Numbered from the stretch's first letter, positions 34,900 to 51,272 are shown. The stretch: DNA of 64,000 nucleotides from Schizochytrium sp. TIO01 (GCA_004764695.1 SMSO01000034.1:4650001-4714000); one strand, 5' to 3'. The notes: generated by a model from the letters alone, not told the origin. Numbers and translations: made by a program.

Positions 34900-37086
34900 A
34901 TGCAAGTCGATGTGGACTACTTTACAAGGACACTCAAGCCTCGTCAAAGCACAGCAGGCGAGAATGAGGCAGGGAATGCCAAGGGAGTGAGAGCAAAGGT
35001 AAACAAACTACGACTGTGGAAAAAGATTGAGAGCATTCGCTATCAGCAAAAGAACAAGGCAAACGAACGGAAGCTTACTGCGATTGCTACCTGTCGCAAG
35101 TCTAAGCAAGCTCGAATTTATACTCTCTATGCTGCCACAGAATCTCTCAGTGTGGTACGTAAGAAAACAAAAATCCGCAAATGTTCATGCCTAGCGCTTT
35201 CAGACAATGGAAACTATGCGGCAGCAGCTTTGTCTGATCAGCGTGCAGTGCAGATTTTTGATTTGAGCGTTGCGGAGCATAAGTTGATTGCACGACTAGC
35301 ATTTCCGATGCACAACCCTCTTGCAAAGCTACAAGACCAGGTCCATGCAGTGAAAATTTCAATAGCAGACAATGGAAAAGCACTTCTTTTGTTTACTGAT
35401 AATAACCAAGTATGGTTATATGGTGTCGAGAGCCCGCTAGCATGGCACCTTGTTGCAGATTACCAAGCCGTGCCACAAGCTCTTCATGTACAATGGCTAT
35501 GTACCAAGTCCTCAGAACTCGCCTTTACACTTGCTATGGGCTTTGCGTCATTTGGTCGAGACCCAAAACGATCCATTCTGGCTTTTACTCAAGAAGTCGT
35601 TCGCTGGGATACCTGGTCTGCAAACCTCCAAAGATCTGACTACCATGGATCCCAAATGACAATACATCACGAGCCCATGGATGCATGCGCCGTCCGGGCG
35701 ATGTGCCTTGCCACTACAAACGACGAACACACTTTGAATTTATACGCTTACGCTATCAACTTCTATGCTTCTGCTCATAGGAATCCATTGCTTATTATCT
35801 CACCAAGTCATAGCGAGCAGGTGATTGTTGTTGACATATTTGATGCACTAGCAAATTCATCGGAAAGTAGCCAGCTCCTCCAAACATTTGTGTGTGATTT
35901 GTGCTGGATTACACGCCTTCGAATCCTAGCCATGACCCTCTCAGATGGCTCTCTATGCCTATTTTCCAGTGCAGGTGCACTTCTAAACATTAGTGCACTC
36001 TCAAGTGAATCTTCTTATGAACCACGGCTCACATTCAGAGATTTAGAACCATTTGAGTTGCTTGGTAAAGTAGAACCTCATTTTGCTATATGTCATCACC
36101 CTGAGGCATCAGAACTTACTTGGTGTGATGGACATCGCAACCTCGTCCATGTGAAGCTACCAAACTTAGAACAACAACCCAATACACAAGCAGATGCCTT
36201 TGTATCAGCATTAAGCTCACTTGTTCCACGCATAAGTGGAGCCTTCCCCTTGCTTAAGGGCCTGCATTGTAATATGCGTGTTTCAAATGTTGGAAGGACA
36301 GTTCAAGCCTGGAGAGCATGCATGTTTGCAAGCCCTGCTCCATGGACTGCTCTAGAGCGTGCATGTGTCCAGAACGTCGCAGATTTGCTCATTCAGTCTC
36401 TAACACCCCTTGTGGAGGAAGAACCCCTTGCAGCTTTAAAACTTGCAACACAATCAATTACTGCAGGGCGATTGCAAGTTCACGCACTTCGAGAAACAGC
36501 GTATATTGCATGCGCTCTTGTAGAAGCATTTATCCGCAATGAGGAATTCTATGCAGCGCTGCACACATTGCGTCATGCTGAGGTATCTCTTCGTCACTGC
36601 ACAACGCAAATTTCTGAAGAGTATGGTCCAACTCTTGATCGTCATTGGTGGATGCTCGGGAAAGCATGTAATCAGAAGCTTGAATCTCTTCAAAGTATGC
36701 GAGACCCATCCTCAGATACTGCTGCAGATACTCTGTTGTTGCTTCGAGCAGTGCAAAGCTATTCTTTTCAGCGTTATAACGTTTGGACTACTGAGCGTAC
36801 GAAAGCACTAGATCTGAACTTCAAGGACCTTCAACTCAGCTTACCTGACAATCATGACTCCAAGAGTCTATCAGCAGATATTAGACCGAAGCTTAGATAC
36901 AACAGCGTACCAAGAGGTGACGAGTATTTCTTGATGGGTTTGTATGATCAGGCAGAAGATGAATATGCCTCTCATCCACTTGGTGCATACCCTCTAATTT
37001 GTCTTTGCTTGCGGCGAATGCGGCTTGAAAAGGCGCTGGATTTGGCCGAAACGTGGTGGTCCCAACCTGTAAACGCGCAAAAGTAA
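34900..37086 (+). CDS. CPLANE1: CPLANE1/JBTS17 (C5orf42)-like protein, segment 1 (N-terminal beta-propeller region plus helical region)
   Basis: FVCDLCW..ILAMTLSDGSLCLFSSAGALL and HFAICHHPEASELTWCDGH resemble the CPLANE1 blocks WVGDISW..FLACMLKRGSLVLLTCQGELL and RFSIKAHSRLPYLVISDGY as I recall them. First in-frame ATG at 34900. Ends at a +1 frame break. Confidence 0.65.
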   Translation: MQVDVDYFTRTLKPRQSTAGENEAGNAKGVRAKVNKLRLWKKIESIRYQQKNKANERKLTAIATCRKSKQARIYTLYAATESLSVVRKKTKIRKCSCLALSDNGNYAAAALSDQRAVQIFDLSVAEHKLIARLAFPMHNPLAKLQDQVHAVKISIADNGKALLLFTDNNQVWLYGVESPLAWHLVADYQAVPQALHVQWLCTKSSELAFTLAMGFASFGRDPKRSILAFTQEVVRWDTWSANLQRSDYHGSQMTIHHEPMDACAVRAMCLATTNDEHTLNLYAYAINFYASAHRNPLLIISPSHSEQVIVVDIFDALANSSESSQLLQTFVCDLCWITRLRILAMTLSDGSLCLFSSAGALLNISALSSESSYEPRLTFRDLEPFELLGKVEPHFAICHHPEASELTWCDGHRNLVHVKLPNLEQQPNTQADAFVSALSSLVPRISGAFPLLKGLHCNMRVSNVGRTVQAWRACMFASPAPWTALERACVQNVADLLIQSLTPLVEEEPLAALKLATQSITAGRLQVHALRETAYIACALVEAFIRNEEFYAALHTLRHAEVSLRHCTTQISEEYGPTLDRHWWMLGKACNQKLESLQSMRDPSSDTAADTLLLLRAVQSYSFQRYNVWTTERTKALDLNFKDLQLSLPDNHDSKSLSADIRPKLRYNSVPRGDEYFLMGLYDQAEDEYASHPLGAYPLICLCLRRMRLEKALDLAETWWSQPVNAQK

Positions 37087-38659
37087 TCGCGCCGCACTAG
37101 GCTTACTCGGCACAATTATGGCAGCTGGATTCCTCAATGACCCCAAACTTGCAGCAGTTCCTAGCCCCTGTGCCGAACCTACTCGCCGATCCGTGCGCCA
37201 TCTTGACCTCAACCTCCTCGCCCGACAAAGCCGTAGAGTCGTTCGATGGGATGCCAGGTGGGCAGCATGCTTCCTACTTGCTGATGATAACCAGGTTCTA
37301 TCTTATCAAGTGATCATGAGGGCACGAGATCCACGCCAAGTCTTGCGAGTTTTTGAGACTGGCTTTGTTCGCGATTCATTCGAGATTGAGCAGCGATCAC
37401 AAATTCTTCAGCGGCAGCTAGTTGCTCAACTTGTTTTGAGAGATTTACGCATGTGTGCTCGAATTATCATATATAGTCGCAAGGTGAAGGAAAACTTGCA
37501 CGTGCGTCTTGCACTTTTGTGGATTCTACTGATTGATCTTGATATGGTAGACTTTGAAAACAAAGTGAATCATTTCGTTCTCTCCGTTGATAAGGTCCAA
37601 ATTGATGAATCACGAAGAGTGCATCACGCCCTATATATTGCAAAATTAGTGCTCTTAGTGGCATGGTCTTCAGGTTGTAACCTGACTTGGGAAAGTCCGT
37701 TACTACATGCATCAACTGAAAATGCTAGTGTTCTCCCCGCCCAAGCTGCATGGTTACAGCCTCTACGAGCATTGGTGATCGTGTTTTGGCGGATTACCAC
37801 TAATCAGCCGCGAAATAAGTTGCTCTCCGAGTTTCTGCGTTCCCACGGCAGGCTTGGAGATCTGCCTGGTAGGGAGTGTGAGTTTGATCTCTTTGCAGAA
37901 TGTAATACTCTTTTGGAAACTGCCGATGTTGATTTCACCGAAATTACACAAGTTCTACTGCGAGGCTCGCCCAATTTGGATGATGATGATAATATTGATC
38001 TGGGAAGTGTTGTTTCTCAACCTTTTGATGCTAATGACCCTGAAGGTGATGACTTTGAATGCCTTGAGGGAAAAGGCTCAGAGGATGAAAGTGAATTGCT
38101 TGATGATGAAAATCACACTCCTGGTACTGACTCGGTATCATGTTATACAGATGCTCATGCTGTAAACCAAAACAATCTCACACAAGACTTATTTCAGGAT
38201 GATAGCCAGAGCGCAGCTTCACGAGACAGTGTCCTCGTTCATGAGATCTCCTCTGACCATAGTTATTCTGGAGATGAAGAAGATATGAGTGAAAAATCAA
38301 TCCTTACCATACCCGAACAGAACGGCGAAAACGAAGATGGCGCAGACAATATTTTTGACGATGAACATAGTCAAAATACCAATGCTAAAAGTCACTCATC
38401 CATAAAACTCCCAGAATATGAGGAGTCAGATAGCGATTTAGCTAGCATATATTCTGAAGATAGTAGTGATGAAAGCGACTTTGAGGATCATAGTCTCCTT
38501 AGTAAAGACAATGAATCTCTCTCAATGCCCCTCTCTCCGCCAAGTATGTCAAGCAACAGTTCAGCTGATGGGGAAGTCGAAGGCCCGAGCCCATGGATAT
38601 TTAATACACAAAACCTCGCCTGTTCCTCCGCAGATTATTCACGTCTCCTCGCGAAGTGA
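37073..38659 (+). CDS. CPLANE1: CPLANE1-like protein, segment 2 (+1 frame; helical region then acidic low-complexity region)
   Basis: Frame opens at 37073, overlapping the segment 1 stop. IMAAGFLNDPKLAAVPSP resembles recalled CPLANE1 FMAAYFTNQQLCILPP, which argues for one gene. Confidence 0.6.
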   Translation, partial: TRKSNRAALGLLGTIMAAGFLNDPKLAAVPSPCAEPTRRSVRHLDLNLLARQSRRVVRWDARWAACFLLADDNQVLSYQVIMRARDPRQVLRVFETGFVRDSFEIEQRSQILQRQLVAQLVLRDLRMCARIIIYSRKVKENLHVRLALLWILLIDLDMVDFENKVNHFVLSVDKVQIDESRRVHHALYIAKLVLLVAWSSGCNLTWESPLLHASTENASVLPAQAAWLQPLRALVIVFWRITTNQPRNKLLSEFLRSHGRLGDLPGRECEFDLFAECNTLLETADVDFTEITQVLLRGSPNLDDDDNIDLGSVVSQPFDANDPEGDDFECLEGKGSEDESELLDDENHTPGTDSVSCYTDAHAVNQNNLTQDLFQDDSQSAASRDSVLVHEISSDHSYSGDEEDMSEKSILTIPEQNGENEDGADNIFDDEHSQNTNAKSHSSIKLPEYEESDSDLASIYSEDSSDESDFEDHSLLSKDNESLSMPLSPPSMSSNSSADGEVEGPSPWIFNTQNLACSSADYSRLLAK

Positions 38660-40040
38660 TGATGAAATGCATGCACTTAACCGCTTAAGGAGTCAATATG
38701 GGGAAATGAAACAAATTCTAGACCGACTTGGATCTGATCAACGGCATGCAGAAGAGCGCACAACAAAGCAACTACATGGAGCATTCGAAGCCTTGGCCAG
38801 TCGTCTTGAGCAGATCGCGGAATCAGTACAGATTCGACAAGTAGAATCTATAAGGAACCTAGAAGAAAAACTGCTTACACATCAAACTGCTTCTGGCCAG
38901 AGGCCCGAGGCTGTAACTGAGAATAAGCAATCCGATGAAGTATTGCAGAGCCCTGATAGCGCAAGTGACTCTTCAGAATTTGACCACTACTCACAGAGCT
39001 CGTCACAGCAAAGTGATGAAGAGGATGAAACAAACCTCCCTCATGGCCTCGCAGCCCAGCAATTTCTCCGTCACGTCCGCTATCGAGGCACACGAAGTCA
39101 TTTACGTGAGCCAACAGATAGACTTCCATCCACTAGCTTTGAAGCTGATAAGGAAGAGGCGCACCATTATATGTTTCCAGGTCTGACGACTTCACCAAAT
39201 CCGAGTCGCAAGAAGGCAACCCGTCGATACTGGCCTACGCAACTTGATGAAAACGTACCTCCGCTACTTATGGTCCATCCAACTACAAAACAAACCTCTC
39301 GAATGTATCGCCACAGACGCAATATGGCTCAACACGCTACTATGGCGACCCAGACGGACAATGTTAACGAACTTTCACCTGCTGTAATGAAACCAAAAGA
39401 TACTCTTGCACAGCTAAACACAAATCTCCCAGTAGCCTTGGAGGACTCTGCCCCAATTTCTCCCCCGCCTCCTCCTCCGCCTCCGCCTCGGTCCCTGGTA
39501 TTTCCTGAGCCAGTTTATCAATCGCCAAAGGACTTTGTGCCTTCACCTCCTCCATCACCCCCACCATCACCCCCACCATCATGTTTGCTCTTACAAGAGG
39601 AAGAGCAAATCGAGAGCAATGCTACATTGAGCTTCGATCCTCCTTTGGAAACGCTTGCTAAAAACCACAACTCCAAAGCTGTACAGACCGCTACCCCCCC
39701 GGGTGATCCGGTGTCCGGTGGTGTTGAGATGAGCGAAAGGCTGCGTAAGATTAATCTGCAATCCAAAGAGTTCTCTACACAAGTTTCATTCTTACGTCCT
39801 AGCGCGGAAGGGTATCCCCAAAGTATTCTACCACATGTACCTCCTGATCTTTACCTTCGGATGCGGGCCCATGGAGTTGCGAGCAAATACAACTCCCAAG
39901 AAGGTTTAGCATCCCGTAGTTATCTACATATTGCCCCTTTGAAAGCATCCTCTGTAGGTATTGCTCAACCTGCTCACGAGGAAGTATCGAGGCCTATTTT
40001 TCATAAATCTAAACGGCCTCGTTTCCGTGGAGTACTATAA
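38466..40040 (+). CDS. CPLANE1-like protein, segment 3 (+1 frame again; coiled coil and Pro-rich tail)
   Basis: Overlaps segment 2 by ~200 nt in the +1 frame with no intergenic space. Coding-like sequence starts near 38610 (TSPVPPQIIHVSSRSDDEM). The three segments joined give ~1712 aa. Confidence 0.55.
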   Translation: MMKATLRIIVSLVKTMNLSQCPSLRQVCQATVQLMGKSKARAHGYLIHKTSPVPPQIIHVSSRSDDEMHALNRLRSQYGEMKQILDRLGSDQRHAEERTTKQLHGAFEALASRLEQIAESVQIRQVESIRNLEEKLLTHQTASGQRPEAVTENKQSDEVLQSPDSASDSSEFDHYSQSSSQQSDEEDETNLPHGLAAQQFLRHVRYRGTRSHLREPTDRLPSTSFEADKEEAHHYMFPGLTTSPNPSRKKATRRYWPTQLDENVPPLLMVHPTTKQTSRMYRHRRNMAQHATMATQTDNVNELSPAVMKPKDTLAQLNTNLPVALEDSAPISPPPPPPPPPRSLVFPEPVYQSPKDFVPSPPPSPPPSPPPSCLLLQEEEQIESNATLSFDPPLETLAKNHNSKAVQTATPPGDPVSGGVEMSERLRKINLQSKEFSTQVSFLRPSAEGYPQSILPHVPPDLYLRMRAHGVASKYNSQEGLASRSYLHIAPLKASSVGIAQPAHEEVSRPIFHKSKRPRFRGVL

Positions 40041-40122
40041 GCATATGTAAAAAGAAGAAATTGTAAACTATAGGTTATGCTGTCTTTCATGTTTGCCCTT
40101 AAAATACAACCGAAATTCAATT

Positions 40123-40704
40123 TCATGGAGACTTGGGAGACTTTTGATGCTCATAGCACCAAATCCTGACGACTTGGCCATCTTCAAGAGTCTCTCTATG
40201 TTGAAAAATACCCATTTCACGACGAATCGCCTTTGCTTTGTCCCAGCTCCATCCATGATCTTGCACCGTATGCTTAATGTAACTAAGTCTAGATGGTCCA
40301 TGTGCAAGAGCTTGTTGGAGAAAAGTACGAATCCTAGCCGCGTCATCCTGCTTAATAGGCTCAATATCTGTTTTTGCTGCTCCTGTTGCTGTTCCTGTTG
40401 ATTCTGCTTGGGAAGAGAAAGCGGAAGATGAAGACTTTAATTGTTTGCTTTCCCGTGGTAAAGGCGGAGAAGCGGTAGTCAAACATGCACTGTTTTGGTT
40501 GTCCGCTAACTTATGATTATTGATCTCACGGTTTGATACAAGAGTTGCAGAAGAGGTCTTTTTTGCATCTTCAACATTATCATGAACTTGATCTTGAAAT
40601 GCAGAAGGACGTCGCAGAGCTAATTCTGACATAGCTATTGGTGATCTTGTTATGCTATCAGTTGTATCCATTCGACTTAAGACCGGCGCGTAACTTATTT
40701 TCAA
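40123..40704 (-). CDS. Probable C-terminal continuation (+1 frame) of the channel gene: S/T-rich linker plus small winged-helix-like domain
   Basis: 193-codon ORF overlapping the channel stop in the +1 frame (open from ~40749). Its stop lies ~80 bp from the convergent gene's stop. Confidence 0.6.
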   Translation of the reverse strand: MKISYAPVLSRMDTTDSITRSPIAMSELALRRPSAFQDQVHDNVEDAKKTSSATLVSNREINNHKLADNQNSACLTTASPPLPRESKQLKSSSSAFSSQAESTGTATGAAKTDIEPIKQDDAARIRTFLQQALAHGPSRLSYIKHTVQDHGWSWDKAKAIRREMGIFQHRETLEDGQVVRIWCYEHQKSPKSP

Positions 40705-43700
40705 GCTCTTGGAAACGAATAGATTGCTTATCCATGGCCTCGCTATAGTTTAGAAGAGCGGCATTGGCCATTGCGGGAGGATGTTGTGCTGGCAAGCTCG
40801 TATTATGACTACTTGGTTCAATAACTTCAAAAGCTTCCTCTTCACGCTTCTCGTAGATTGCTTCATTGCTCATGTTTGCAATAATTTTGCGCGAATCCCA
40901 ATAATTAATATCCAAGTCTCTGAATAGATGCTTATGTTTGCGATTTGTTCGCAATGACGATTCAATTTCCTCGGTAATAAATTGCTCCCACATTGAATCA
41001 CTTGCTTCTCTCTCCTTGGGATACACATCTGTAACAATAGCAATGAGTAAATTAATATTAATTGTTGCAAACATGATGAAGCTTGCTGCTGCCAGTAGCC
41101 CAGACCAAGAAGTTGACGCGATCAATTCAAGCCCATCCCAACTCTCTACAAATGGGGTATAGAATAACGAGTAAAATGTGCTCCCAAAAGTCATCCAAGG
41201 ACTTACACTTGATCCAAATCCCACATGAAAACAAAAAGCTAGTAAAAAGCATGCAGCGGCTACCACGAGTAGATAGATACCAACGGCAAGGTTAGTAATG
41301 GTATTGGTGAGTGCAACAATTACAGGACCAATATCTGGAATTGACCGTGCAGCACGTAATAGTGGAATCATGCTTAGCAGAAAGATCACAGCTACCGTTC
41401 GACGCTCGGTTTGTAAGAGGCGGTGATGTTCGCCCCAAGAAGAAAATTCACTACCTGAAACATTAGTTCGGATACCCCTGGTCTGAGCAAAAGCTTGATA
41501 ATCGATCACAAGAACCGTAAGCAAAAGTGCAAGCACAACAAAAACGACTGCTGGAGGCTTCCGAGAACGAATAATTTTTGAGTGCATAGCGTAAGAGAGT
41601 AACAGAAGTATCATCCCCGCAACTGTGCCTTCGAACTCCCTTGAGGGAGGAAACCGACGATAATCGACTCTAAACTCCTGGACACTCACGTCCAGACTTG
41701 GACCCGCATAGAACGAAGTTGACATAGTAGCTTGAACTATGCCATAGATGTTATGAAGTGGGTTATATAGGTTCATTTCGATCGAGAGGACTTGCATACC
41801 ACCAGTGTCATTGTGCCGTATAGTCGAGTTCATAACTGTTGAAATTTGTTCCGAAGTGCTTTGAGCCAGAATTGATACAAATGATTCACCTGTCTCTCTC
41901 AAAGACTCACTTGCGTCTTGCCAAACTAGGCCATGAGCAAGCAAAGGTAAGACAGTTTGCTCCAACTTTAATCCTCCAATTACACGATTGTATCCCATAT
42001 AGATGAGTGAATCATCTGTGATATTAAATCTAAATTGATTCGGGAACTCATTCACTAACCAATTCTCCATGTCCTCAAAGGACTTCACATCTTGTACGTT
42101 GTCCTCAATTTCTGCCTTCAAACTTTCTCGCCAGCTACGTTCTGCTGTAACATCATAATCAGGCGCAAGTTGAACCATCATTGCAAACCATACTAAAATT
42201 CCAATCAGAACTGTAGTTCGTCGAAAGAACTGCCACATTGCATGCCGGTTTCGCCAGCGACGTACGGAATGAGACAAGTTTAACACATCAATAAGCTCAG
42301 TCGATGCTACAAGCTGAAGTTCTAGCTCTTTGAGGATGTGCTGCAGCTCGCGAAGCGGCTTATTTGCAATCGACTCCGGAGTCAACTCGGAACGAGCATG
42401 TTGCAGAATGCCTCCTCTCTTGGAATCCTTTAGTAGTGAAGCGCGAGGTCCATATTGAAAAGGAGCTGATGGAAAGCCCCAGTGCATGGAGCGTTCTTGA
42501 ACCTCTGCTCGTAATCTTTCAACATCATCAGCAATATGAATGTGTTGGTATAATGCTCGGTAGTAAGGTGTGAGCGGCCCTGCATCCGTCCCAGGCTCCT
42601 CCATAATAGGATCCGCAGATAGCTCGATCAGACTTTTAACAACCTCGATCTTTTCATTCTGGACAGCCATAGACAGGGGCGAGTACATTGAAATGTGTTG
42701 CTTAGTTTCCTTAACGTTGGAGTGACTTACTCCAAGCGGTGCAACGGCTGTTGAGACGAGCTTAGGTACAACTAAACGTAAAACACTCCATCGTGTGCGA
42801 GCTTTAGCGCTTTGTGGGATTGGGCTATCTCCTTTCGTTTGTGAAACTGAAAAACTTACAGATTTGTTCATCTGCGGATCGTCCAATGACATGAGTTCTT
42901 CAATCTCCAAGCTCTTGTCAACCTTTGCCATTTCTGAAAGCTGAAGAGTTTCTACCCCCCGTAAGCTAAGATTGACAATTTCATCGACTTGATAAAGCTG
43001 CTGCAAATGACGAACAAGGTATTCACAGCATTTAGTATGCCCTTGATATGCAGCATGATGCAATGCAGTGAAACCAAGATTATCAGGGATGAGAACTTTT
43101 ACATCTACTTCTGACTCTACAAGTATCTTGCACATTTCAAGATCACCTATATACGCTGCAAGAGACACCGCTGTAAAGCCGTTTGTATCTCGCCGATTTG
43201 CATCAACATGGAGTGCCAACAAATGCCGTACAGTTGAATAGTGCCGACCAAGCACCGCAAGAGAAAGCGCTGTTCTTCCGTTCTTGTTCTTTACGTTAAG
43301 ATCGGCACTTGCATTCTGTACCGAATGAGATAGAATAATATTGATCGAATCAAGATGCCCACGGCGCACAGCTGCAAGCAAGTATGAGTTCAACAATTGC
43401 TGGCGCATTTGATGCACATTGTGAAACGTAAGTTTTTCACATGTCATGTCAACTGATTCTCGCCTTGCCCTCTCCTGTGTTCTCTTAAGGATATTTGCAG
43501 TTGCGTTTTCGCTTACAGGGCATATTTCCCAGCCCAAACACATGATTGCCTTGATCGTCTCTTCTACGCCTTGCACCAGATCAAACTTTTCAGTTTTGTT
43601 GAGTTTCGAGTAGGGTACTAAGGATGCGTTGAGTTTGAGGTTGCTTGCGATATTTCGGTGCGGAGCATATCGCCAACCCTGGGTGATTTTCTCACGAGCC

Positions 43701-46177
43701 CAGACTTCATGAGAATTGACTGAAATGCATCGGATTAGTTCCTCCAAGTGAATCGATAAGGTGCTCGATACCTTGCTAGTATCAATCGAAGCACAACCTG
43801 GCTTATCCTCATCCCATTCCTTATCAGCATAGCGAAGAGATTTTCGGTGATCACGTCCAGTTGGCGGAGACTTGCGCAACGGCTCCTGAGTGTCTTTAGA
43901 CGGTGGCTCCAACCTGAAACCCAACAAGAGGATAAGTTTCACCGTCTCAGAGGCCATGTGCATGTTATATTTCGCTTCTTCGGCTGTGAGATCTTCAAAA
44001 GGAACTAATAAGGGATGCAGCTTAGCATTGTCGTCGCGTGTTTTAGAATATGACCAACTATCTTTAATTTTCTGCATGCACCACACATTGTGCATATTTC
44101 TCGCAAGCCTTCTCGCAAGCGCCTTCGTTGTTGGGCTTAGGCGCACCACACTCGTGTCTAAAGGTTGAGGGTCGAATGTTTGAGCAGCGTGTTCCCTTGC
44201 ATCAAAAGGTTTAATTGCTTGACAAACCCAATGCGGTTTAGTGCTGCATTCACAAAGTGAAAGGCTAAAACCTTTTGCCACTAGAGGCCCTTCGCAGTTC
44301 TTATGGCATCTCTCACGGCACACAAGGCATACATCCATCTCACATTTCGAACAATAATACATGAATTGCAGCATATGTTTGAAATCGGCACATGAGGATG
44401 TACATGTCTCTGGGGACTCGATTCGTTTTGTTAGTGCAACGAGTGCGTGGTCAATACGTATGTCATTCTCTGGAGCAAAATTCAATATGCTTTCACATCC
44501 CTCGACATCTCCCATAAGCACAAGGCGATGTAAGAGCTCTTGCATTCGTCCACGTTCAGCTGATGCATAGCAACCCATCCGCAGTAACATCCGTACTGCT
44601 TCAAGGTTATCCTTTTCGATAGCAAGATCAAGTTCTGTAATTCCCTGCTCTCGAGAGGCCTCTGCAAGAGGAGGGTGTATGGCACGATTGATTTGGAAGA
44701 CATCTTCCACGCGTTCTGCATTTGCTTCGGCGTCTTGCCATAGCTCAACCAGCGTCCGAATGACTTCAACGTTTCCATTAGCAGTGGCCAAATGTGTAAA
44801 TGAGTAATGTGCTAAAGTAAGCTCATTAATTGGCAAAGGAGCTTCAAAAAATGGCTGCCCAAGTAGTTTGCTCCACGAAAGATGCGCAAAGGCCCCACTT
44901 CTTGCCGCGTAATGTAAAGCATTCCAACCGTCCTGGTCGACAGCTTGCAAAAGTCCTACAGGACTTAGACTGTATTCGAAAAGAAGCTTGGCACACCGCG
45001 CGTGGCCTTCACTTTCTTGGGATAAAGCAAGCATTAGAGCGGTTCGTCGGTACATGTCTATTGCTTCAATGTGGTTTGAGGCACTGTTTATTTGGAGAAG
45101 AATTTCTACAATCTCAGGTTCGCCTTGTTCGCAAGCTACAATCAAGGATGTCTGAGAGTTAGGTGGGTGCTGATGCATAGCGACAGAAGCTCTGAGTCGT
45201 TCGCTAGAAAGCATCAAGAGACGCACGCATTCTGTGCGGTAAGTGCGCGGAGCAAAATATAATGCTAAGCCCAACGGGGTAAGTCTCTGATCGTCCTGGA
45301 CTCTAGGATCGATGTCAGGACACATTCGTAAAAGAGTCTCTAGCGCTTGAATATTCCCTGAAAGGCAGCACGCATGCAGAATTGTCCTTTGACAGTAGCT
45401 CGAACGTGCATTGATATCCACAATCTTGTTAAGGCGGTCCTCAGTAAGAACCCAGTGCTCTGACTGAGCAAGAAGCAACACGGTTTCATCAATAATATTT
45501 CCTGGAATCCTATCGTACAGAGAACTTTCAATCGTAGCAACAATGTCTGTAGTTTGTACATAATGAATTTTATTTTGTGAGTTTTGCATGTGTACCTCTT
45601 CATCACCAGTATCATTTAAGGTTGCCTCTCGAAAGCAGGCGTCCTGAACAATATAGATTCGTGCATCTTGCACATGGACGCATGCATCAATCGCAGTATA
45701 TCGTGTTGCATCCCCTGCACCACAAATATAAAGATCGTCGACTGCACCAGAGCGATGCAAAATTGTTTTCATAGCCGTAAGTGTTTCTGAACCATAGTCT
45801 CGAAATGCAGAGTACGTGTCACGTTGAGGGTCTGTGCCCGTGAAGATAATATGGTTATCGATGGCAAGACGCAAAGGTGTTGCTCCACTGGTCCCCGCAA
45901 CACATTCTTCATTACGAAGACGTTGGGTGTCCCCAAGTTGTAAAATATAGCGAACTTCTCCCTTTTGCGCACCGGGGTGGTTTTCTACAAATGAACAATG
46001 CGTACATGGATGATACTTCAGGCAAATAAAGACCTCATCGAAGAATCCATCAGTCTGAAGGTGTTCGATATTTGCAAGGACCAAGTCCGGGTTGTCTGAT
46101 CGCTTATAAATATCTTCTTGCACGTGCATGAGGACCAAGCCTCGTTTCCTTCTCGGCTTTCGAGGTGTTTGGCTCAT
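40658..46177 (-). CDS. Multidomain TRP/polycystin-like cation channel: nicotinamidase-fold domain + ankyrin repeats + UBR-box-like Zn finger + 2 RyR repeats + ankyrin repeats + 6-TM PKD-type channel
   Basis: 1839-aa ORF. Ankyrin motifs (GWNALHYAARSG, GRTALSLAVLGRH, GFTALHHAAYQGH). RyR motifs (LARNMHNVW..WSYSKTRDDNAKLHPLLVPFEDL; NSHEVW..GWRY..LVPYSKL). Polycystin-like extracellular motifs (NRVIGGLKLEQ, EMNLYNPLHNIY). S6 motif INLLIAIVTDVY. Confidence 0.88.
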   Translation of the reverse strand: MSQTPRKPRRKRGLVLMHVQEDIYKRSDNPDLVLANIEHLQTDGFFDEVFICLKYHPCTHCSFVENHPGAQKGEVRYILQLGDTQRLRNEECVAGTSGATPLRLAIDNHIIFTGTDPQRDTYSAFRDYGSETLTAMKTILHRSGAVDDLYICGAGDATRYTAIDACVHVQDARIYIVQDACFREATLNDTGDEEVHMQNSQNKIHYVQTTDIVATIESSLYDRIPGNIIDETVLLLAQSEHWVLTEDRLNKIVDINARSSYCQRTILHACCLSGNIQALETLLRMCPDIDPRVQDDQRLTPLGLALYFAPRTYRTECVRLLMLSSERLRASVAMHQHPPNSQTSLIVACEQGEPEIVEILLQINSASNHIEAIDMYRRTALMLALSQESEGHARCAKLLFEYSLSPVGLLQAVDQDGWNALHYAARSGAFAHLSWSKLLGQPFFEAPLPINELTLAHYSFTHLATANGNVEVIRTLVELWQDAEANAERVEDVFQINRAIHPPLAEASREQGITELDLAIEKDNLEAVRMLLRMGCYASAERGRMQELLHRLVLMGDVEGCESILNFAPENDIRIDHALVALTKRIESPETCTSSCADFKHMLQFMYYCSKCEMDVCLVCRERCHKNCEGPLVAKGFSLSLCECSTKPHWVCQAIKPFDAREHAAQTFDPQPLDTSVVRLSPTTKALARRLARNMHNVWCMQKIKDSWSYSKTRDDNAKLHPLLVPFEDLTAEEAKYNMHMASETVKLILLLGFRLEPPSKDTQEPLRKSPPTGRDHRKSLRYADKEWDEDKPGCASIDTSKVSSTLSIHLEELIRCISVNSHEVWAREKITQGWRYAPHRNIASNLKLNASLVPYSKLNKTEKFDLVQGVEETIKAIMCLGWEICPVSENATANILKRTQERARRESVDMTCEKLTFHNVHQMRQQLLNSYLLAAVRRGHLDSINIILSHSVQNASADLNVKNKNGRTALSLAVLGRHYSTVRHLLALHVDANRRDTNGFTAVSLAAYIGDLEMCKILVESEVDVKVLIPDNLGFTALHHAAYQGHTKCCEYLVRHLQQLYQVDEIVNLSLRGVETLQLSEMAKVDKSLEIEELMSLDDPQMNKSVSFSVSQTKGDSPIPQSAKARTRWSVLRLVVPKLVSTAVAPLGVSHSNVKETKQHISMYSPLSMAVQNEKIEVVKSLIELSADPIMEEPGTDAGPLTPYYRALYQHIHIADDVERLRAEVQERSMHWGFPSAPFQYGPRASLLKDSKRGGILQHARSELTPESIANKPLRELQHILKELELQLVASTELIDVLNLSHSVRRWRNRHAMWQFFRRTTVLIGILVWFAMMVQLAPDYDVTAERSWRESLKAEIEDNVQDVKSFEDMENWLVNEFPNQFRFNITDDSLIYMGYNRVIGGLKLEQTVLPLLAHGLVWQDASESLRETGESFVSILAQSTSEQISTVMNSTIRHNDTGGMQVLSIEMNLYNPLHNIYGIVQATMSTSFYAGPSLDVSVQEFRVDYRRFPPSREFEGTVAGMILLLLSYAMHSKIIRSRKPPAVVFVVLALLLTVLVIDYQAFAQTRGIRTNVSGSEFSSWGEHHRLLQTERRTVAVIFLLSMIPLLRAARSIPDIGPVIVALTNTITNLAVGIYLLVVAAACFLLAFCFHVGFGSSVSPWMTFGSTFYSLFYTPFVESWDGLELIASTSWSGLLAAASFIMFATININLLIAIVTDVYPKEREASDSMWEQFITEEIESSLRTNRKHKHLFRDLDINYWDSRKIIANMSNEAIYEKREEEAFEVIEPSSHNTSLPAQHPPAMANAALLNYSEAMDKQSIRFQELENKLRAGLKSNGYN

Positions 46178-47605
46178 GTTGATAGCCTCCGGAAATACCT
46201 TCCCACCACCAAATTTCTGCGTGTCAAACTTTTCGCAATACCACCCGGCCGCCTTACATATGGTCCCGATCTGCCGTGCGAAGTCTCTACCAGCTTATTT
46301 GCTGCTTTGTCTGAGGTCCGCAAACACTTTTGATAGAAATATTCCTCTTCCAAACGTTGTTGCTGTCGCTGTCGCTGTCCCTCTGAACTCTGTATTGTTT
46401 TGCTGCAGCCAATACTTTAGTCTGCACACATTTCTATACCATTTGCTTCTCAAAGAGCCCAAGCTACAGCCACTTAAAGGTTGTCTCTGTAACAACCTGA
46501 TCAGTCTTGGGACTTCCTTGCACTTCTCGTATTACCATCTCATTTGTCCGTTTCTAAAGGATACTCCTTATGGGTCCCCCATTTCTTTCTACAATATTCA
46601 TTTCGTCACAAAGGCATTATGACATAAAACATCTTCCCATATTTGGTTCTGAAGAATGTCAATAGGCGATGCATTGCTCGAATTGCAGGATAATCACGTG
46701 GGTATGTATGTGCCTCATCCGTACTTAGCTATTGCACTTCAGATGGAAAGCCTGTACTACTAGGTGTATTTAGCACTACCAAGGCATCTACTAGGTACTA
46801 CCTACCGGTATCAGTAATTGGTAAATAGGCCACTACTACCGCAGGGTTAATTGATTGAACATTATATTATTCAATTTATTTGACCAACAACTTAAACTCC
46901 AAGTTGGTTGGCGAATTAATATAAAACAATCATGCGTTGCTATTCCCTACCCGGCAGAGCATTTCTGCCATTAGGTCCTTTTTTCTACCAGCAACCGTAC
47001 TTCTTCTTGGAGATGTAATAGCCTGAGTGATCGACAGCTGCAAGCTTGGCATCTGTATTTCGTGAAGCCCTCATTCATAGTCTCCTTTTGCAATTAAGGC
47101 ACCTATGTTGGATCTCAGTTAGTTCTTCTTGACGATAAAACATTTGCACTAGCGAACTAAAGTTTACGATGTGTACGAGATATTGATAAGAGTCATTTAC
47201 AAGAAATAATAATAGTCCCATTCGGCCCTTGTGGTATCTTTGATGTTTTGGACCCTTCTTCCGTCCGATCCGCTAATGAACTATCATTTCAAGGTTAAGC
47301 AAGAATGACTTCGGCACCGATCCAAGGAGGCAACAATACCGATTCCTAGACCGCGGGGTGTATTCACGTTTCGTGTACCTTGTCTTGAGTAAAGCACGCA
47401 AAAGGTTCGTGGGTTGTAGCAGGATCCGGTGCGCACTTTTACAGTCTTGAGCTCATCTCAACAACTTCTCTGAGCATACGAAATACCTGCGAAAGTCGCG
47501 CCCAAAATTGAAATACCGAAAGTTCTAACGCAAGAGCATAAGTGCACCTCCCAAGTTGAAAATCAAGGCTCGCGGGAGTGTTTGGAAAAACTAGCACAAC
47601 CAAGG

Positions 47606-48538
47606 ATGACAAGTGCTCCTTTGATGCTTGGCCCTGAGCCAATTGAGATTGATGGGAAAGAGTATGTGGTTCGATCTGATATGGTTCGCAGGCGCAAGCC
47701 TCCGACTGTGCAGGCAAGAACGCAAAAGATGCTCGCGTATCTGGGGGTGTTAGCTGGATTGGCAGCGTCAAGACGGCTTCGTTTGTTTTTTGCTGCCGGA
47801 TTTGCTGGATCAGGTGTGGCAATGGCTTTGCTCTACACCATCATGCGCTCCTCAAAATCATTGAGTGAAGCAATTACTTCACGCCTACTTCCTCAAATGA
47901 TGGCGGGACTTGACATTGCAATGGGCAAAGTGAAGAAGGAGCTACTCAAGGACTTGAAAGGAGATGTTCTCGATTTTGGTGCAGGCGATGGACAGTACTT
48001 AAAATACGTTGCGAGCCAAGTAGATAAGATCAAATCTGTGACTAGCCTTGAGCCCTTGCAAAAGTTTCATACGAAGATTGAAGAGCGCGCGAAAGCACTC
48101 GGTGTGCCTTTCAAGGGCGTTTATAAGAAGTATTCCGCAGACTTGCTTCGCGAGCGTGGTCCAGAGCAATTCGACACCATTATTGTTGGTTGTGTTCTTT
48201 GCGAAGTACCAGATCAACACGCTGCAGTCAAGGATCTGTATCAGTTACTTCGTCCTGGAGGAAAGCTTTTCTACATAGAACACGTTGCTTACGAGGAAGG
48301 AACCTTGCTCAATTACCTTCAACAATTTATCAATCCTTTCTGGAGAGTTGTGAGTGGCGGTTGCAATTGCAATCGCCATACTCTGCGTGCAATTCGATCC
48401 GCTCCCTGGAATGTGTTTACTTGGGAGCTACTGACCGATGTTCCTCTACTAAATCGCATGCAAACAGGCCTCGCTGTCAAGGAAGACCTCGCTAATCCTG
48501 ATATCCATACGCCTACGAACAACAATGCACGTCTTTAA
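47606..48538 (+). CDS. Class I SAM-dependent methyltransferase, METTL7/TMT1-like
   Basis: Motif I VLDFGAGDG, FDTII..VLCEV, LLRPGGKLFYIEH, GCNCNR, N-terminal hydrophobic segment. First ATG at 47606. Confidence 0.88.
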   Translation: MTSAPLMLGPEPIEIDGKEYVVRSDMVRRRKPPTVQARTQKMLAYLGVLAGLAASRRLRLFFAAGFAGSGVAMALLYTIMRSSKSLSEAITSRLLPQMMAGLDIAMGKVKKELLKDLKGDVLDFGAGDGQYLKYVASQVDKIKSVTSLEPLQKFHTKIEERAKALGVPFKGVYKKYSADLLRERGPEQFDTIIVGCVLCEVPDQHAAVKDLYQLLRPGGKLFYIEHVAYEEGTLLNYLQQFINPFWRVVSGGCNCNRHTLRAIRSAPWNVFTWELLTDVPLLNRMQTGLAVKEDLANPDIHTPTNNNARL

Positions 48539-49345: not shown

Positions 49346-51163
49346 TTAGGTGATCACAGTGGGACCCTCACGCCCGGTAATGGCGTGAATGTCAGAAAAG
49401 TCAAGGGCCAGCTGTACAAGGGACTCGAGCGCCGTAGCGGTCTCCTGGTTCGTGTCTTCCTTGCTGTATTTCTCAATGTACAGGCGGATTGTGGCGCCAA
49501 CGGAGCCAGTTCCGGAGAGGCGAAAGACGAAACGAGAACCGTCGCCCATAAGGAAACGCCAACCCTGGTTCGGGGAGATGGAGCCGTCAACCTCATCGTG
49601 AAATTCGAATTCATCGCATTTCACGAGCGTGAAGCCACCTCCGACCTCGAGAGGCTTCTCGCCCGTGAGCTGGAACATGAAGATGATGCCATTAAGGCGG
49701 GCCATGACCTTTTGTGCGAGGTCTGCCTCAACATTCTCATAATCATACCGCGTGTAGTAGTTACGGCCAAAGTTCTCCCAATGCTCACGGACCACATCTT
49801 CGACAGATACAAGCGGCTTGGACTTATCGGTATTCTTGGCTGCAAGGATGTTAAGCCAGCAAAGTACTGCGAAAATACCGTCCTTCTCGCGAATGTGGTT
49901 GGACCCCGTACCGAAGGACTCTTCTCCACAGAGCACGGGGTTGAAGTCCTTTTCACCGCCGGTGAGCTCCTTGGCGTCCATGAGGTTTCCAAAATACTTC
50001 CAGCCTGTAGGTGTCTCGAAAAACTTCATATCCTTATCCTCTGCCACGCGATCTGCCGCTCCAGATGTCGGCATACTGCGAGCCACCGTCTTGAGACCGT
50101 CCTTGAAAAACTTGATACACTCTGCATTGTTGGCAATCACTGCGAGTGAGTCCGAAGGAGTCACAAAGAACTGTTTTCCGAGAATCATGTTACGATCAGC
50201 ATCACCGTCTGCGGCAGCTCCGAAGTCTGGGAGACTGTCAGGATCTACGTCGGCGAGAGCGCATCCCTTGGAGTCCAAGCCCATGCTCTTGACCAGGTCA
50301 TGAGCGTAAGTGAGGTTGGGATCCGGGTGGCCTCCGCCAAAATCCTCGAGAGGCTCGCAGTTCTGAAGCTGCTCCAGAGGCACGCCGAGTTCCTGGTGGA
50401 AGATGCGCTTGGCAAAAGGACCGGCCACACCGCTCATGGCGTCGTAGGTGAAGGTGAAATCATCGCGTTCCAGGAAGGCCTTAATTTCCCCGAGGTCAAA
50501 GACTTCATCCATGAGCTGCGCATATGTTTCAGTAGAGTCAATGACTTCGACGCTAAAGTTGTCTCCAAAGGAGGTCTCACCAACGGTGGCAAGGTCTACT
50601 TCGGGAAGGTCGGCGATCTTATACTCAGAGATCGTCTGGGAGATCTTGAAGATGGCGTCAGTAATGGCCTCGTTTGCAGGGCCACCGTTGCGGGAGTTGT
50701 ACTTGAGACCGCAATCTTCGTTAGGGCCGGCAGGGTTGTGGCTGGCAGTCATGATAAAGCCTCCGGCAGCGCCAAGGGACCGGATGAGGTGGCTCACAGC
50801 AGGCGTGGAGATGAGACCCTCAAGACCGACCACGACCTTTGCAACGCCGTTGGCACAGGCCATGCGGATGATGGTCTGAGCCATTTCTTTGTTGTAGTAG
50901 CGGCCATCACCGCCAAGAATCAACAGATCTCCCTCGGGATTGGCGTCGCCTTTAAGAGAGTCAAAGGTGGCCTGGACGAAGTTCTCAACGTAGTTTTCCT
51001 GCATGAAGACCTTGGCTTTCTTGCGAAGACCCGAGGTGCCAGGCTTCTGGCCCTCATAGGGCTTCGTGCTCACTGTCTGGATCTTGGGGCTGCTCATCGT
51101 GGCAAAAGGCACTTGCTGCCTCGCTCTCAATCGGATTTGCGTTCGGATTTGCTGTACCAACAT
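49346..51163 (-). CDS. PGM: Phosphoglucomutase (eukaryotic PGM1 family)
   Basis: QKPGTSGLRKK, phosphoserine loop TASHNP, metal loop DGDADR, GEESFG, RLSGTG, C-terminal PTVIT. Candidate ATGs at 51163 and 51097. Confidence 0.97.
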   Translation of the reverse strand: MLVQQIRTQIRLRARQQVPFATMSSPKIQTVSTKPYEGQKPGTSGLRKKAKVFMQENYVENFVQATFDSLKGDANPEGDLLILGGDGRYYNKEMAQTIIRMACANGVAKVVVGLEGLISTPAVSHLIRSLGAAGGFIMTASHNPAGPNEDCGLKYNSRNGGPANEAITDAIFKISQTISEYKIADLPEVDLATVGETSFGDNFSVEVIDSTETYAQLMDEVFDLGEIKAFLERDDFTFTYDAMSGVAGPFAKRIFHQELGVPLEQLQNCEPLEDFGGGHPDPNLTYAHDLVKSMGLDSKGCALADVDPDSLPDFGAAADGDADRNMILGKQFFVTPSDSLAVIANNAECIKFFKDGLKTVARSMPTSGAADRVAEDKDMKFFETPTGWKYFGNLMDAKELTGGEKDFNPVLCGEESFGTGSNHIREKDGIFAVLCWLNILAAKNTDKSKPLVSVEDVVREHWENFGRNYYTRYDYENVEADLAQKVMARLNGIIFMFQLTGEKPLEVGGGFTLVKCDEFEFHDEVDGSISPNQGWRFLMGDGSRFVFRLSGTGSVGATIRLYIEKYSKEDTNQETATALESLVQLALDFSDIHAITGREGPTVIT

Positions 51164-51272
51164 CGCCTCGGCGAGGCTGAAGCAACGACGACTATAGTAA
51201 TTGGAAAGAGCACTAAAAAATATCATTCCTCCTTATAATCACCCATCTACCATTAACCATAACAGTATTCAT

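What the first reader, a model, noticed from the sequence alone, without database searches (positions are those of the whole stretch)
40123..46177. TRP-type channel with an architecture I do not recognise: pseudo-nicotinamidase / ankyrin / UBR-box / RyR-RyR / ankyrin / polycystin channel / winged helix
Seen, approximate order on the minus strand: nicotinamidase-fold domain (46141-45535), ankyrin block 1 (45420-44480), Cys-rich Zn finger (44405-44215), two RyR repeats (44180-43520), ankyrin block 2 (43380-42610), six-TM channel with a large S1-S2 loop (42230-41020), and a +1-frame tail. Established: each module is known separately, and enzyme-fold ligand sensors on TRP channels exist (TRPM2 NUDT9-H, TRPM6/7 kinase). 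Inference: this is a metabolite-gated cation/Ca2+ channel integrating several inputs. I know of no described family with this combination.
Basis: partly seen in the sequence, partly recalled or inferred. Interest (0 to 1): 0.92.

Follow-up and report, generated by a model that had tools for sequence, protein, structure and literature searches.

The report
Polycystin channel with RyR and pseudo-nicotinamidase
A marine protist (thraustochytrid) gene encodes one ~2,000-residue polycystin-type cation channel with an unusual cytosolic arm (a dead nicotinamidase domain, ankyrin repeats, a UBR-like zinc finger and two ryanodine-receptor repeats); I found no paper describing this family, and its trigger is unknown.

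Summary
Window 40123-46177 (minus strand) is one intronless gene.
- a nicotinamidase-fold domain without its catalytic residues (PDB 2wt9, E 1.5e-13)
- two ankyrin blocks
- a Cys-rich finger most like the UBR4 UBR box (E 1.6e-3, weak)
- two RyR repeats (Pfam E 2.7e-47)
- a 6-TM channel whose AlphaFold model matches polycystin-2 over about 500 columns, S1-S2 domain included (Foldseek E 4e-13)
- a C-terminal winged-helix-like domain (weak fold support)

The "+1 tail" is not recoding. Four other assemblies lack one base at 40683-40686 and read straight through.

The gene is not an orphan. The same genome has a paralogue on another contig, Hondaea has both types, and complete transcripts exist in other protists. 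At least 16 sequence clusters share the domain order. The nearest described family, oomycete PKDRR, has its RyR domains after the channel and lacks the other modules.

None of 22 channel-linked nicotinamidase domains keeps the catalytic lysine. This copy has also lost the Asp, the Cys and two of the four metal ligands, so metabolite gating is unlikely here. It remains plausible for the paralogue.

Verdict: a real, apparently undescribed variant of a polycystin/TRPP channel, gating unknown.

The parts
40123..46177 (-). Whole gene: a 1839-codon ORF plus a 193-codon tail in the +1 frame. It would be about 2015 aa with the extra base removed. No introns.
   Evidence: No joints in contigs from 4 runs. 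Collinear with the Hondaea orthologue P0002 (52% identity, 96% coverage).
45533..46144 (-). Nicotinamidase-fold pseudo-enzyme domain (residues 12-215). Catalytic Asp->His, Lys->Thr, Cys->Ala; metal ligands Asp->Lys and His->Glu.
   Evidence: PDB 2wt9 at E 1.5e-13. BLASTP to the paralogue's domain at 4e-31. Residue table; alignment.
44498..45415 (-). Ankyrin block 1 (residues ~255-560), ending in a highly conserved linker (LHRLVLMGDVEGCESILNF).
   Evidence: Pfam Ank families. Linker HMM conserved across the family.
44204..44410 (-). Cys-rich zinc finger, UBR-box-like of the UBR4 type (residues 590-658). Nine Cys and one His are invariant in 8 family members.
   Evidence: PDB 8j9q at E 1.6e-3 over the full domain. 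Pfam zf-UBR E 0.13, below cutoff. Invariant columns.
43907..44176 (-). RyR repeat 1 (residues 668-757).
   Evidence: Pfam PF02026 positions 1-90 of 91. The family profile hits RyR1 residues 849-946.
43520..43801 (-). RyR repeat 2 (residues 793-886).
   Evidence: Second PF02026 stretch. Local HMM.
42593..43405 (-). Ankyrin block 2 (residues ~925-1066), a variable low-complexity linker, and a last ankyrin-like repeat (1166-1190).
   Evidence: Pfam Ank_2 best stretch 979-1057. Linker only 37% identical to Hondaea.
40916..42271 (-). Polycystin-type channel module (residues 1303-1754): pre-S1/S1, the S1-S2 polycystin (TOP) domain, S2-S6, and a long post-S6 helix with a conserved WE..IT motif.
   Evidence: AF2 model, pLDDT 83.7. 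Foldseek to PKD2 6t9n at E 4.2e-13 over 514 columns, then PKD2L1 and TRPML1. Pfam near threshold.
41642..42172 (-). S1-S2 extracellular/luminal polycystin (TOP) domain (residues 1336-1512), with three N-x-S/T sequons.
   Evidence: Beta-sheet plus helices in the model. Covered by the PKD2 alignments. Pfam Polycystin_dom found in relatives. Sequons.
41135..41152 (-). Pore filter FVESWD (residues 1676-1681). E1678-S-W are the only non-helical residues between the two pore helices of the model.
   Evidence: DSSP of the model. Aligns to NavAb TLESWS and to the LGD-type filters of distant polycystin-like relatives.
40683..40686 (.). Site of the frame break. The plus strand reads CCGG and carries one base too many.
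   Evidence: X1 and X3 lack one C; X15 and X17 lack one G. Sequence. P0001 reads ...KLRAVLSRMD... straight through.
40685..40756 (-). Predicted C-terminal helix, possibly a coiled coil (residues 1808-1831), running into the frame break.
   Evidence: Helix 527-560 of the model slice. 'Coiled coil' is my inference.
40153..40350 (-). C-terminal winged-helix-like domain in the +1-frame tail.
   Evidence: AF2 pLDDT 82.5, H-H-H-hairpin topology. Foldseek top hits are PadR/MarR-type wHTH at E 0.011-0.2. Conserved in P0002, P0003, P0005 and P0030.

Best explanation
The gene encodes one subunit of a tetrameric polycystin-type (TRPP-like, group 2 TRP) cation channel of a thraustochytrid.

Shown:
- One uninterrupted gene carries, in order: a nicotinamidase-derived pseudo-enzyme domain, ankyrin repeats, a UBR-like zinc finger, a pair of RyR repeats, more ankyrin repeats, a PKD2-like 6-TM channel with its S1-S2 polycystin domain, a long post-S6 helix, and a small winged-helix-like end domain.
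- The order is conserved in an ancient paralogue, in Hondaea, and in at least 16 clusters of unnamed or protist sequences.
- Strain variants in the gene are mostly synonymous.
- The nicotinamidase domain cannot be an enzyme.

Inferred:
- The roughly 1,300-residue N-terminal arm is cytosolic. It acts as a regulatory and protein-docking scaffold that couples to the gate through the pre-S1 and post-S6 helices, as ankyrin and RyR-repeat assemblies do in other TRP and RyR channels.
- The pore has a ring of four glutamates (E1678) where PKD2 has D643, so it conducts cations and probably Ca2+.
- In this copy the nicotinamidase domain is a structural relic, or has been re-purposed as a surface, rather than a nicotinamide sensor.

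The frame change before the tail is an assembly or consensus artefact.
For: Domains:
- Pfam RyR 2.7e-47 and Ank 4.8e-48.
- Nicotinamidase 2wt9 at E 1.5e-13.
- UBR4 box at E 1.6e-3.
- Channel model pLDDT 83.7. PKD2 is the top fold match at E 4e-13 over about 500 columns.
- Relatives of the channel exceed the Pfam cutoffs for Polycystin_dom and PKD_channel.

One gene:
- Continuous ORF. No joints in 4 assemblies, and all 4 lack the extra base.
- P0001 reads through the break.
- The MMETSP transcript P0005 is a complete ORF with every module from nicotinamidase to tail.

Conservation:
- The paralogue L011:1657-7983 is 34-36% identical over the whole length.
- The domain order recurs in P0001-8, P0014, P0021, P0022, P0025, P0033, P0040, P0046 and P0065.
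- Strain variants are 24 synonymous against 16 non-synonymous.
- Folded domains are 53-73% identical to Hondaea (the extracellular TOP domain 39%), against 30-37% for the linkers.

Dead enzyme:
- 0 of 22 domains keep the catalytic Lys. This copy keeps 2 of 7 key residues.

Tetramer:
- Four copies of the S4-S5-to-S6 segment scored ipSAE 0.42, against 0.00 for the best of 3 controls.
- That mark was reached by 21 of 30 proteins solved as pairs of one chain and by 0 of 23 solved as single chains.
- The runs agree in at least 93% of contacts, and partner pLDDT is at least 66.
- The calibration used two copies, not four, and a pass may come from memory of solved channels.
Against: - No measurement of conduction, localisation or expression exists for this gene. 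The only possible RNA run (X17) is a guess and could be DNA.
- Pfam PKD_channel and Ion_trans are below their cutoffs for this copy.
- The filter sequence (VESW) is unlike PKD2's LGD and looks more like BacNav TLESW. Ion selectivity therefore cannot be read off.
- If the extra base is real in this strain, the protein would lack its last ~180 residues, including the winged-helix domain.
- The UBR-box and winged-helix assignments are statistically weak.
Confidence: 0.78

Rival explanations
1. It is a metabolite-gated channel. The nicotinamidase-derived domain binds nicotinamide or an NAD-derived messenger without turnover and opens the pore, in the way the NUDT9-H domain does in TRPM2.
For: - The catalytic Lys is lost in all 22 channel-linked domains, while Asp, Cys and all four metal ligands are kept in a subset (P0004-7, P0025).
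- In the paralogue type this domain is the most conserved part of the protein: 90% identity between the own-genome copy and Hondaea, against 76-89% for the other folded domains.
I did not check that note.
Against: - In the window's copy and its Hondaea orthologue, 5 of the 7 key pocket residues are replaced, and there is a 2-residue deletion at the Cys loop.
- No binding data exist for any member.
Confidence: 0.1
2. It is simply a member of the oomycete-type PKDRR family, so the architecture is already described.
For: Both combine a PKD-type channel with two RyR domains, and both occur in stramenopiles (PMC7399828, PMC4820453). A protein with the PKDRR order (P0133: channel, then two C-terminal RyR domains) is a distant hit of the channel profile at E 1.3e-6.
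Against: [quoted passage not shown] Here they lie about 500 residues before S1, between ankyrin blocks.
- PKDRR lacks the nicotinamidase, UBR-like and ankyrin modules.
- In a quick tree, P0133 sits far from this clade, among channel-only proteins. That tree is low-confidence because of long branches.
Confidence: 0.05
3. The architecture is an artefact (a chimeric assembly or fused gene models), or the gene is a decaying pseudogene, as the frame break would suggest.
For: There is a frame break at 40683-40686 in the window.
Against: - Contigs from four independent studies cover the region collinearly and lack the extra base.
- The two groups of runs differ there by a synonymous GCC/GCG. The window's GCCGGTC therefore looks like both alleles merged.
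- Orthologues, paralogues and complete transcripts share the order.
- Strain variants are mostly synonymous.
Confidence: 0.04

Closest known systems
Polycystin-2 / PKD2 and PKD2L1 (TRPP, group 2 TRP channels)
   Same: Both have the 6-TM fold with an S1-S2 polycystin (TOP) domain, two pore helices and a tetrameric pore. PKD2 is the best structural match. The model's C-terminal helix after S6 may correspond to the cytosolic coiled coil of PKD2 (my knowledge of PKD2; inference).
   Different: Only 12-13% sequence identity. The filter is VESW, not LGD. There is no EF hand. The cytosolic N-terminus of about 1,300 residues is built of modules that PKD2 lacks.
Oomycete PKDRR channels (Zheng et al. 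2020, PMC7399828; Zheng & Mackrill 2016, PMC4820453)
   Same: Both are stramenopile PKD-type channels combined with a tandem pair of RyR domains, and in both the function is untested.
   Different: In PKDRR the RyR pair is at the C-terminus, after the channel. PKDRR has no nicotinamidase-fold domain, UBR-like finger, ankyrin blocks or winged-helix end. The channel domains are only distantly related.
TRPM2 (NUDT9-H domain) and the TRPM6/7 chanzymes
   Same: A TRP-superfamily channel fused to an enzyme-fold domain that has lost, or need not use, catalysis. This is an analogy of design.
   Different: The enzyme fold differs (cysteine-hydrolase/isochorismatase-like, not Nudix or kinase). It sits at the N-terminus. 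The channel belongs to a different TRP group. No ligand is known, and the pocket has decayed in this copy.
Ryanodine receptors (Repeat1-2 / Repeat3-4 domains)
   Same: The two RyR repeats match RyR1 residues ~849-946 and their partner repeat at E about 1e-77 for the family profile.
   Different: No RIH, SPRY, MIR or RyR/IP3R-type pore was found. The database names 'Ryanodine receptor 3' (P0003) and 'Ankyrin repeat domain-containing protein 1' (Hondaea) are annotation by partial similarity.
Nicotinamidase PncA/Pnc1 (isochorismatase-like cysteine hydrolases)
   Same: Homologous fold. The paralogue matches 2wt9 at E 5e-47, and this copy at 1.5e-13.
   Different: The catalytic Lys is absent family-wide. 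This copy also lacks the Asp, the Cys and two metal ligands.

Membership tests
Polycystin-type (TRPP / group 2 TRP) channel | Six TM helices with a re-entrant pore loop between S5 and S6 | tested here: met
   AF2 model helices. Foldseek to PKD2 at E 4e-13, TM 0.5-0.65.
Polycystin-type (TRPP / group 2 TRP) channel | Large folded S1-S2 polycystin/TOP domain | tested here: met
   A 177-residue beta/alpha domain lies between S1 and S2 in the model and falls inside the 480-514-column PKD2 alignments. Pfam Polycystin_dom is detected only in relatives.
Polycystin-type (TRPP / group 2 TRP) channel | Pfam PKD_channel at or above the gathering score | tested here: not met
   17.6-20.5 bits against a cutoff of 22.4 for this copy. 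The paralogue reaches 28.7 bits.
Polycystin-type (TRPP / group 2 TRP) channel | Homotetramer that conducts cations | tested here: inconclusive
   Tetramer model: ipSAE 0.42, best of 3 controls 0.00; mark reached by 21 of 30 proteins solved as pairs of one chain and 0 of 23 solved as single chains; runs agree in >=93% of contacts, partner pLDDT >=66. The pass may come from memory of solved channels. Conduction cannot be tested here.
PKDRR (oomycete PKD-RyR-RyR channels) | PKD channel domain plus two RyR domains in one protein | tested here: met
PKDRR (oomycete PKD-RyR-RyR channels) | [quoted passage not shown] | tested here: not met
   The RyR repeats are at residues 668-886 and the channel at 1303-1754. 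Definition from PMC4820453 and PMC7399828.
Ryanodine/IP3 receptor superfamily | RIH, MIR/SPRY domains and a RyR/IP3R-type pore | tested here: not met
   Pfam lists none of them for this protein or for 8 family members.
Nicotinamidase (active enzyme) | Isochorismatase-like fold homologous to PncA | tested here: met
   2wt9 at E 1.5e-13.
Nicotinamidase (active enzyme) | Catalytic triad Asp-Lys-Cys | tested here: not met
   His/Thr/Ala at the three positions.
Nicotinamidase (active enzyme) | Metal-binding Asp and His ligands | tested here: not met
   Lys-His-His-Glu in place of Asp-His-His-His.
UBR box zinc finger | Match to the zf-UBR profile or to a solved UBR box over the whole domain | tested here: inconclusive
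   Pfam 12.8 bits against a cutoff of 25.2. UBR4 box 8j9q at E 1.6e-3, residues 5-71 of 73.
UBR box zinc finger | Conserved Cys/His zinc ligands | tested here: met
   9 Cys and 1 His are invariant in 8 members at 27-54% identity.
UBR box zinc finger | Binds N-degron peptides | not testable with these tools
Winged helix | H1-H2-H3 followed by a beta-hairpin wing, and structural neighbours of that fold | tested here: inconclusive
   The topology is present at pLDDT 82.5. All top Foldseek hits are wHTH proteins, but the best E is 0.011 and TM is 0.5-0.6.

The most novel reading that the evidence does not exclude
The family descends from a fusion in which a lysine-less nicotinamidase became a non-hydrolysing sensor of nicotinamide or an NAD-derived messenger on a polycystin channel. 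That would be an independent invention of the TRPM2 principle, linking NAD turnover to Ca2+ entry in heterotrophic stramenopiles. The paralogue type (L011, P0004-7, P0025) would still work this way. The window's type would have lost ligand binding and be gated through its UBR-like, RyR-repeat or winged-helix modules.
Probability: 0.18. Interest if true: 0.85.

Novelty: new variant of a known kind. Interest (0 to 1): 0.62.

Why it matters
- Polycystin channels are usually small-armed. Their gating is poorly understood, and their protist relatives are almost unstudied.
- This protein joins a PKD2-like pore to modules otherwise known from RyRs (the RyR repeat pair), from N-degron ligases (the UBR box) and from NAD salvage (nicotinamidase).
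- It shows that eukaryotic RyR domains outside RyRs are not confined to oomycete PKDRR and CaMK proteins, as was stated in 2016-2020.
- A pair of ancient paralogues in one tractable industrial protist group (thraustochytrids) differ in whether the nicotinamidase pocket is preserved. That is a natural experiment for asking whether an enzyme-derived domain gates a TRP channel.
- The practical consequence is modest: the database names ('Ryanodine receptor 3', 'Ankyrin repeat domain-containing protein 1') should be corrected.

Tried and rejected
I therefore have no genomic context for the homologues, and domain slices of database proteins could not be handed to the tools. I worked with slices of the window and of the own-genome paralogue, and with local HMMs.
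- A profile search with the whole-family alignment was swamped by unrelated ankyrin proteins and added almost nothing. The whole-length PDB profile search was swamped in the same way.
- The atlas look-up of the tail gave only unnamed phage clusters at chance-level scores.
- Pfam on the N-terminal domain and on the tail alone found nothing.
- The VIA-align wide search of the tail model had not finished after seven collection attempts and is not used.
- The tree is only the quick version and has long branches. I use it only as weak support.
- Programmed +1 recoding at the tail is rejected: four other assemblies simply lack one base.
- RyR/IP3R membership is rejected: no RIH, SPRY or MIR domain.
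- An active chanzyme is rejected for this copy.
- No run is on record as RNA, so expression of this very gene remains unshown.
- Because of the frame break, the main ORF and the tail were searched and folded apart. The uninterrupted natural protein P0001 from another assembly was used where a continuous sequence was needed.


Full report
**What is in the sequence**

The minus strand holds an ATG-initiated ORF of 1839 codons at 40658-46177. A 193-codon open frame in the +1 register at 40123-40704 overlaps its end. G+C is about 45%, like the rest of the window. The neighbours are ordinary eukaryotic genes: a GBF1-like Sec7 exchange factor, a phosphoglucomutase and a methyltransferase. The window is contig C33:4650001-4714000 of a 64-Mb, 37-contig assembly. 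The nearest named relative of the protein is from Hondaea fermentalgiana (52% identity), so the organism is a thraustochytrid. An earlier follow-up note on the same genome says the same.

**The frame break**

The minus strand reads aag tta cgc gcc ggt ctt aag ... tga. A 1999-aa protein from another assembly, P0001, is about 99.5% identical and reads ...KLRAVLSRMDTTDS... straight into the tail.

I laid contigs from four runs of four different studies on 40101-46100. All four lack one base in the plus-strand CCGG at 40683-40686. Two lack a C and two lack a G, and no joints were seen (sequence). Both versions restore the same reading (Arg-Ala-Val-Leu-Ser) and differ only by a synonymous GCC/GCG alanine codon. 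The window's GCCGGTC looks like the two alleles merged into one consensus. I read that as an assembly artefact. This is an inference, because none of the runs is demonstrably the source strain. The real product is then about 2015 aa. There is no need for recoding and there are no introns.

**Modules (window-protein numbering)**

- **Residues 12-215, nicotinamidase fold.** This segment alone hits the Acinetobacter baumannii nicotinamidase 2wt9 at E 1.5e-13 and a second nicotinamidase, 9u8m, at 7e-9. Pfam's Isochorismatase model misses it. It aligns to the paralogue's domain at 4e-31, and that domain hits 2wt9 at 5e-47. Read against those alignments:
  - the catalytic Asp is His, the Lys is Thr and the Cys is Ala, with a two-residue deletion in the Cys loop;
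  - two of the four metal ligands are replaced, Asp by Lys and His by Glu.
- **Residues ~255-560 and ~925-1066, plus a last repeat at 1166-1190: ankyrin repeats**.
- **Residues 590-658, Cys-rich finger.** Nine Cys and one His are invariant in eight family members. Its best and only significant PDB match is the UBR box of UBR4, over the whole 73-residue domain, at E 1.6e-3. Pfam zf-UBR gives E 0.13. 'UBR-like' is reasonable but not proven.
- **Residues 668-757 and 793-886, two RyR repeats.** Pfam E 2.7e-47. The family profile matches the Repeat1-2 region of RyR1-3 at about 1e-77.
- **Residues 1303-1754, the channel.**
  - Sequence alone gives only sub-threshold Ion_trans and PKD_channel hits, plus a pore alignment to NavAb at E 5e-5.
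  - I built a 37-sequence alignment from a full-library profile search. The AlphaFold model from it has mean pLDDT 83.7.
  - Its best structural matches are about 30 polycystin-2 and PKD2L1 structures, at E 4e-13 to 1e-9 over 470-514 columns, followed by TRPML1. The S1-S2 beta/alpha domain is therefore included.
  - Relatives found with the channel profile exceed the Pfam cutoffs for Polycystin_dom and PKD_channel, for example P0031 of Pterocystis at 2e-17 and 2e-15.
  - In the model, the only non-helical residues between the two pore helices are E1678-S-W. In the alignment this Glu falls where distant polycystin-like relatives have the Asp of LGD-type filters.
  - Four copies of the S4-S5-to-S6 segment gave ipSAE 0.42, against 0.00 for the best of three controls. 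That mark was reached by 21 of 30 proteins solved as pairs of one chain and by 0 of 23 solved as single chains. The runs agree in at least 93% of contacts, partner pLDDT is at least 66, and contacts run along S6. The tool warns that its calibration used two copies rather than four, and that a pass may reflect memory of solved channels.
- **The tail.** The last ~70 residues are conserved in P0002, P0003, P0005 and P0030. They fold at pLDDT 82.5 as three helices and a beta hairpin. Every top Foldseek neighbour is a winged-helix protein (PadR, MarR/ArsR-like, FOX, RPC62), but the best E is 0.011. The fold is plausible. A function such as DNA binding is not implied.

**Is it one real gene?**

Yes, on several lines of evidence:

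- The own genome has a paralogue at L011:1657-7983 (2108 aa, 34-36% identity end to end) with the same order.
- Hondaea has one of each type.
- An MMETSP transcript (P0005, annotated as a complete ORF) contains every module from nicotinamidase to tail. A TRINITY transcript of the bigyran Cantina marsupialis (P0020) has finger-RyR-RyR-channel.
- I built local HMMs from family slices and ran them over the 156 proteins collected. The order nicotinamidase - finger - RyR(-RyR) - channel appears in P0001-8, P0014, P0021, P0022, P0025, P0033, P0040, P0046 and P0065. The same order without the first domain appears in P0016, P0020, P0028, P0034 and P0103.
- The channel profile has only 247 hits at E <= 1e-3 among 1.84 billion representatives, so this is a small, lineage-restricted group.
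- Among strain variants inside the gene, 24 are synonymous and 16 are not. That is roughly a dN/dS of 0.2 by a crude 3:1 site count.
- Folded domains are 53-73% identical to Hondaea (the extracellular TOP domain 39%), while the linkers are 30-37%.

**The pseudo-enzyme**

None of 22 channel-linked nicotinamidase domains has the catalytic lysine. The commonest replacement is Ala. One subset (P0004-7, P0025) keeps the Asp, the Cys and all four metal ligands. Others, including the window's type, have lost most of them.

In the paralogue type this domain is the most conserved part of the protein: 90% identity between the own-genome copy and Hondaea, against 76-89% for the other folded domains. In the window's type it is average, at 56%.

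My reading is that the fused domain was already non-catalytic at the origin of the family. It is under strong constraint in one paralogue line, which is compatible with ligand sensing. In the window's line it has relaxed to a structural domain. Loss of activity on removal of this lysine is established for PncA and Pnc1 (my knowledge, not tested here).

**How it probably works**

- Shown: the fold and the architecture.
- Inferred: a tetrameric cation channel with a glutamate ring in the filter, probably Ca2+-permeable. The polycystin domain would face outside or into a lumen; it has three N-glycosylation sequons. A cytosolic N-terminal arm of ~1,300 residues would transmit protein or ligand inputs to the gate through the conserved pre-S1 helices and the long post-S6 helix with its conserved WE..IT motif.
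- What opens it is unknown. For this copy I put metabolite gating by the nicotinamidase domain at about 0.1.

**Comparison with what is known**

[quoted passage not shown] That defining order is not met here, and PKDRR lacks the other modules. A protein with the PKDRR order (P0133) is only a distant hit (E 1.3e-6). It lies far from this clade in a quick tree that has long branches.

Those papers state that eukaryotic RyR domains occur only in RyRs, PKDRRs and oomycete CaM kinases. This family, and a stand-alone RyR-domain protein in the same genome (L005), extend that list.

Full-text searches for the combination found nothing: RyR domain + ankyrin + isochorismatase; thraustochytrid + ryanodine; PKDRR; nicotinamidase + ion channel + ankyrin + stramenopile. 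TRPM2 with its NUDT9-H domain is a functional analogy only.

**Verdict**

This is a new variant of a known kind (polycystin/TRPP channels). It is not an orphan, and it is apparently undescribed. The scan's earlier notes cover only this same window, apart from a separate Nudix-TRP fusion elsewhere in the genome.

**Limits**

- No RNA run is on record.
- The broken gene was handled in two pieces throughout.

Noticed in passing
L011:1657-7983 (+) = G000:C13:~1778156-1784482: Paralogue of 2108 aa with the same domain order. Its nicotinamidase domain keeps the Asp, the Cys and all four metal ligands and lacks only the Lys (Ala). It is 90% identical to its Hondaea orthologue in that domain. It has no winged-helix tail.
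   Followed up: partly
L005:1237-1965 (+) = G000:C30, around 3265249-3265710: Small 242-aa protein that is essentially one stand-alone RyR domain (Pfam 1.6e-35) after a helical N-terminus. Eukaryotic RyR domains outside channels are said to be rare.
   Followed up: partly
P0133 (MMETSP0308 / EukProt, Gloeochaete wittrockiana): A 1194-aa transcript-derived protein with a polycystin-like channel followed by two C-terminal RyR domains. This is the PKDRR order outside oomycetes, contrary to the published claim of oomycete restriction, unless it is a contaminant of that transcriptome.
   Followed up: no
window 34858-40040 (+): Three overlapping or abutting long ORFs (742, 513 and 524 aa) in different frames with no Pfam match. 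They look like one gene broken by frame shifts. This fits small indel errors in this assembly.
   Followed up: no
window 40409-40959 and 41450-41685 (-): Strain variants are mostly non-synonymous in the C-terminal third (10 of 13 from residue 1498 to the tail) and mostly synonymous upstream (21 of 27). The C-terminal linker evolves fast.
   Followed up: partly
P0003 (NCBI CAK9073272.1) and P0002/P0006 (Hondaea fermentalgiana): Family members are named 'Ryanodine receptor 3' and 'Ankyrin repeat domain-containing protein 1' in public databases. Both names come from partial domain similarity and mislead.
   Followed up: partly
window 54866-60691 (+), 49346-51226 (-), 47582-48538 (+): Ordinary neighbours: a GBF1-like Sec7 ArfGEF (1941 aa), a phosphoglucomutase, and a class I methyltransferase. 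All are long intronless ORFs.
   Followed up: partly
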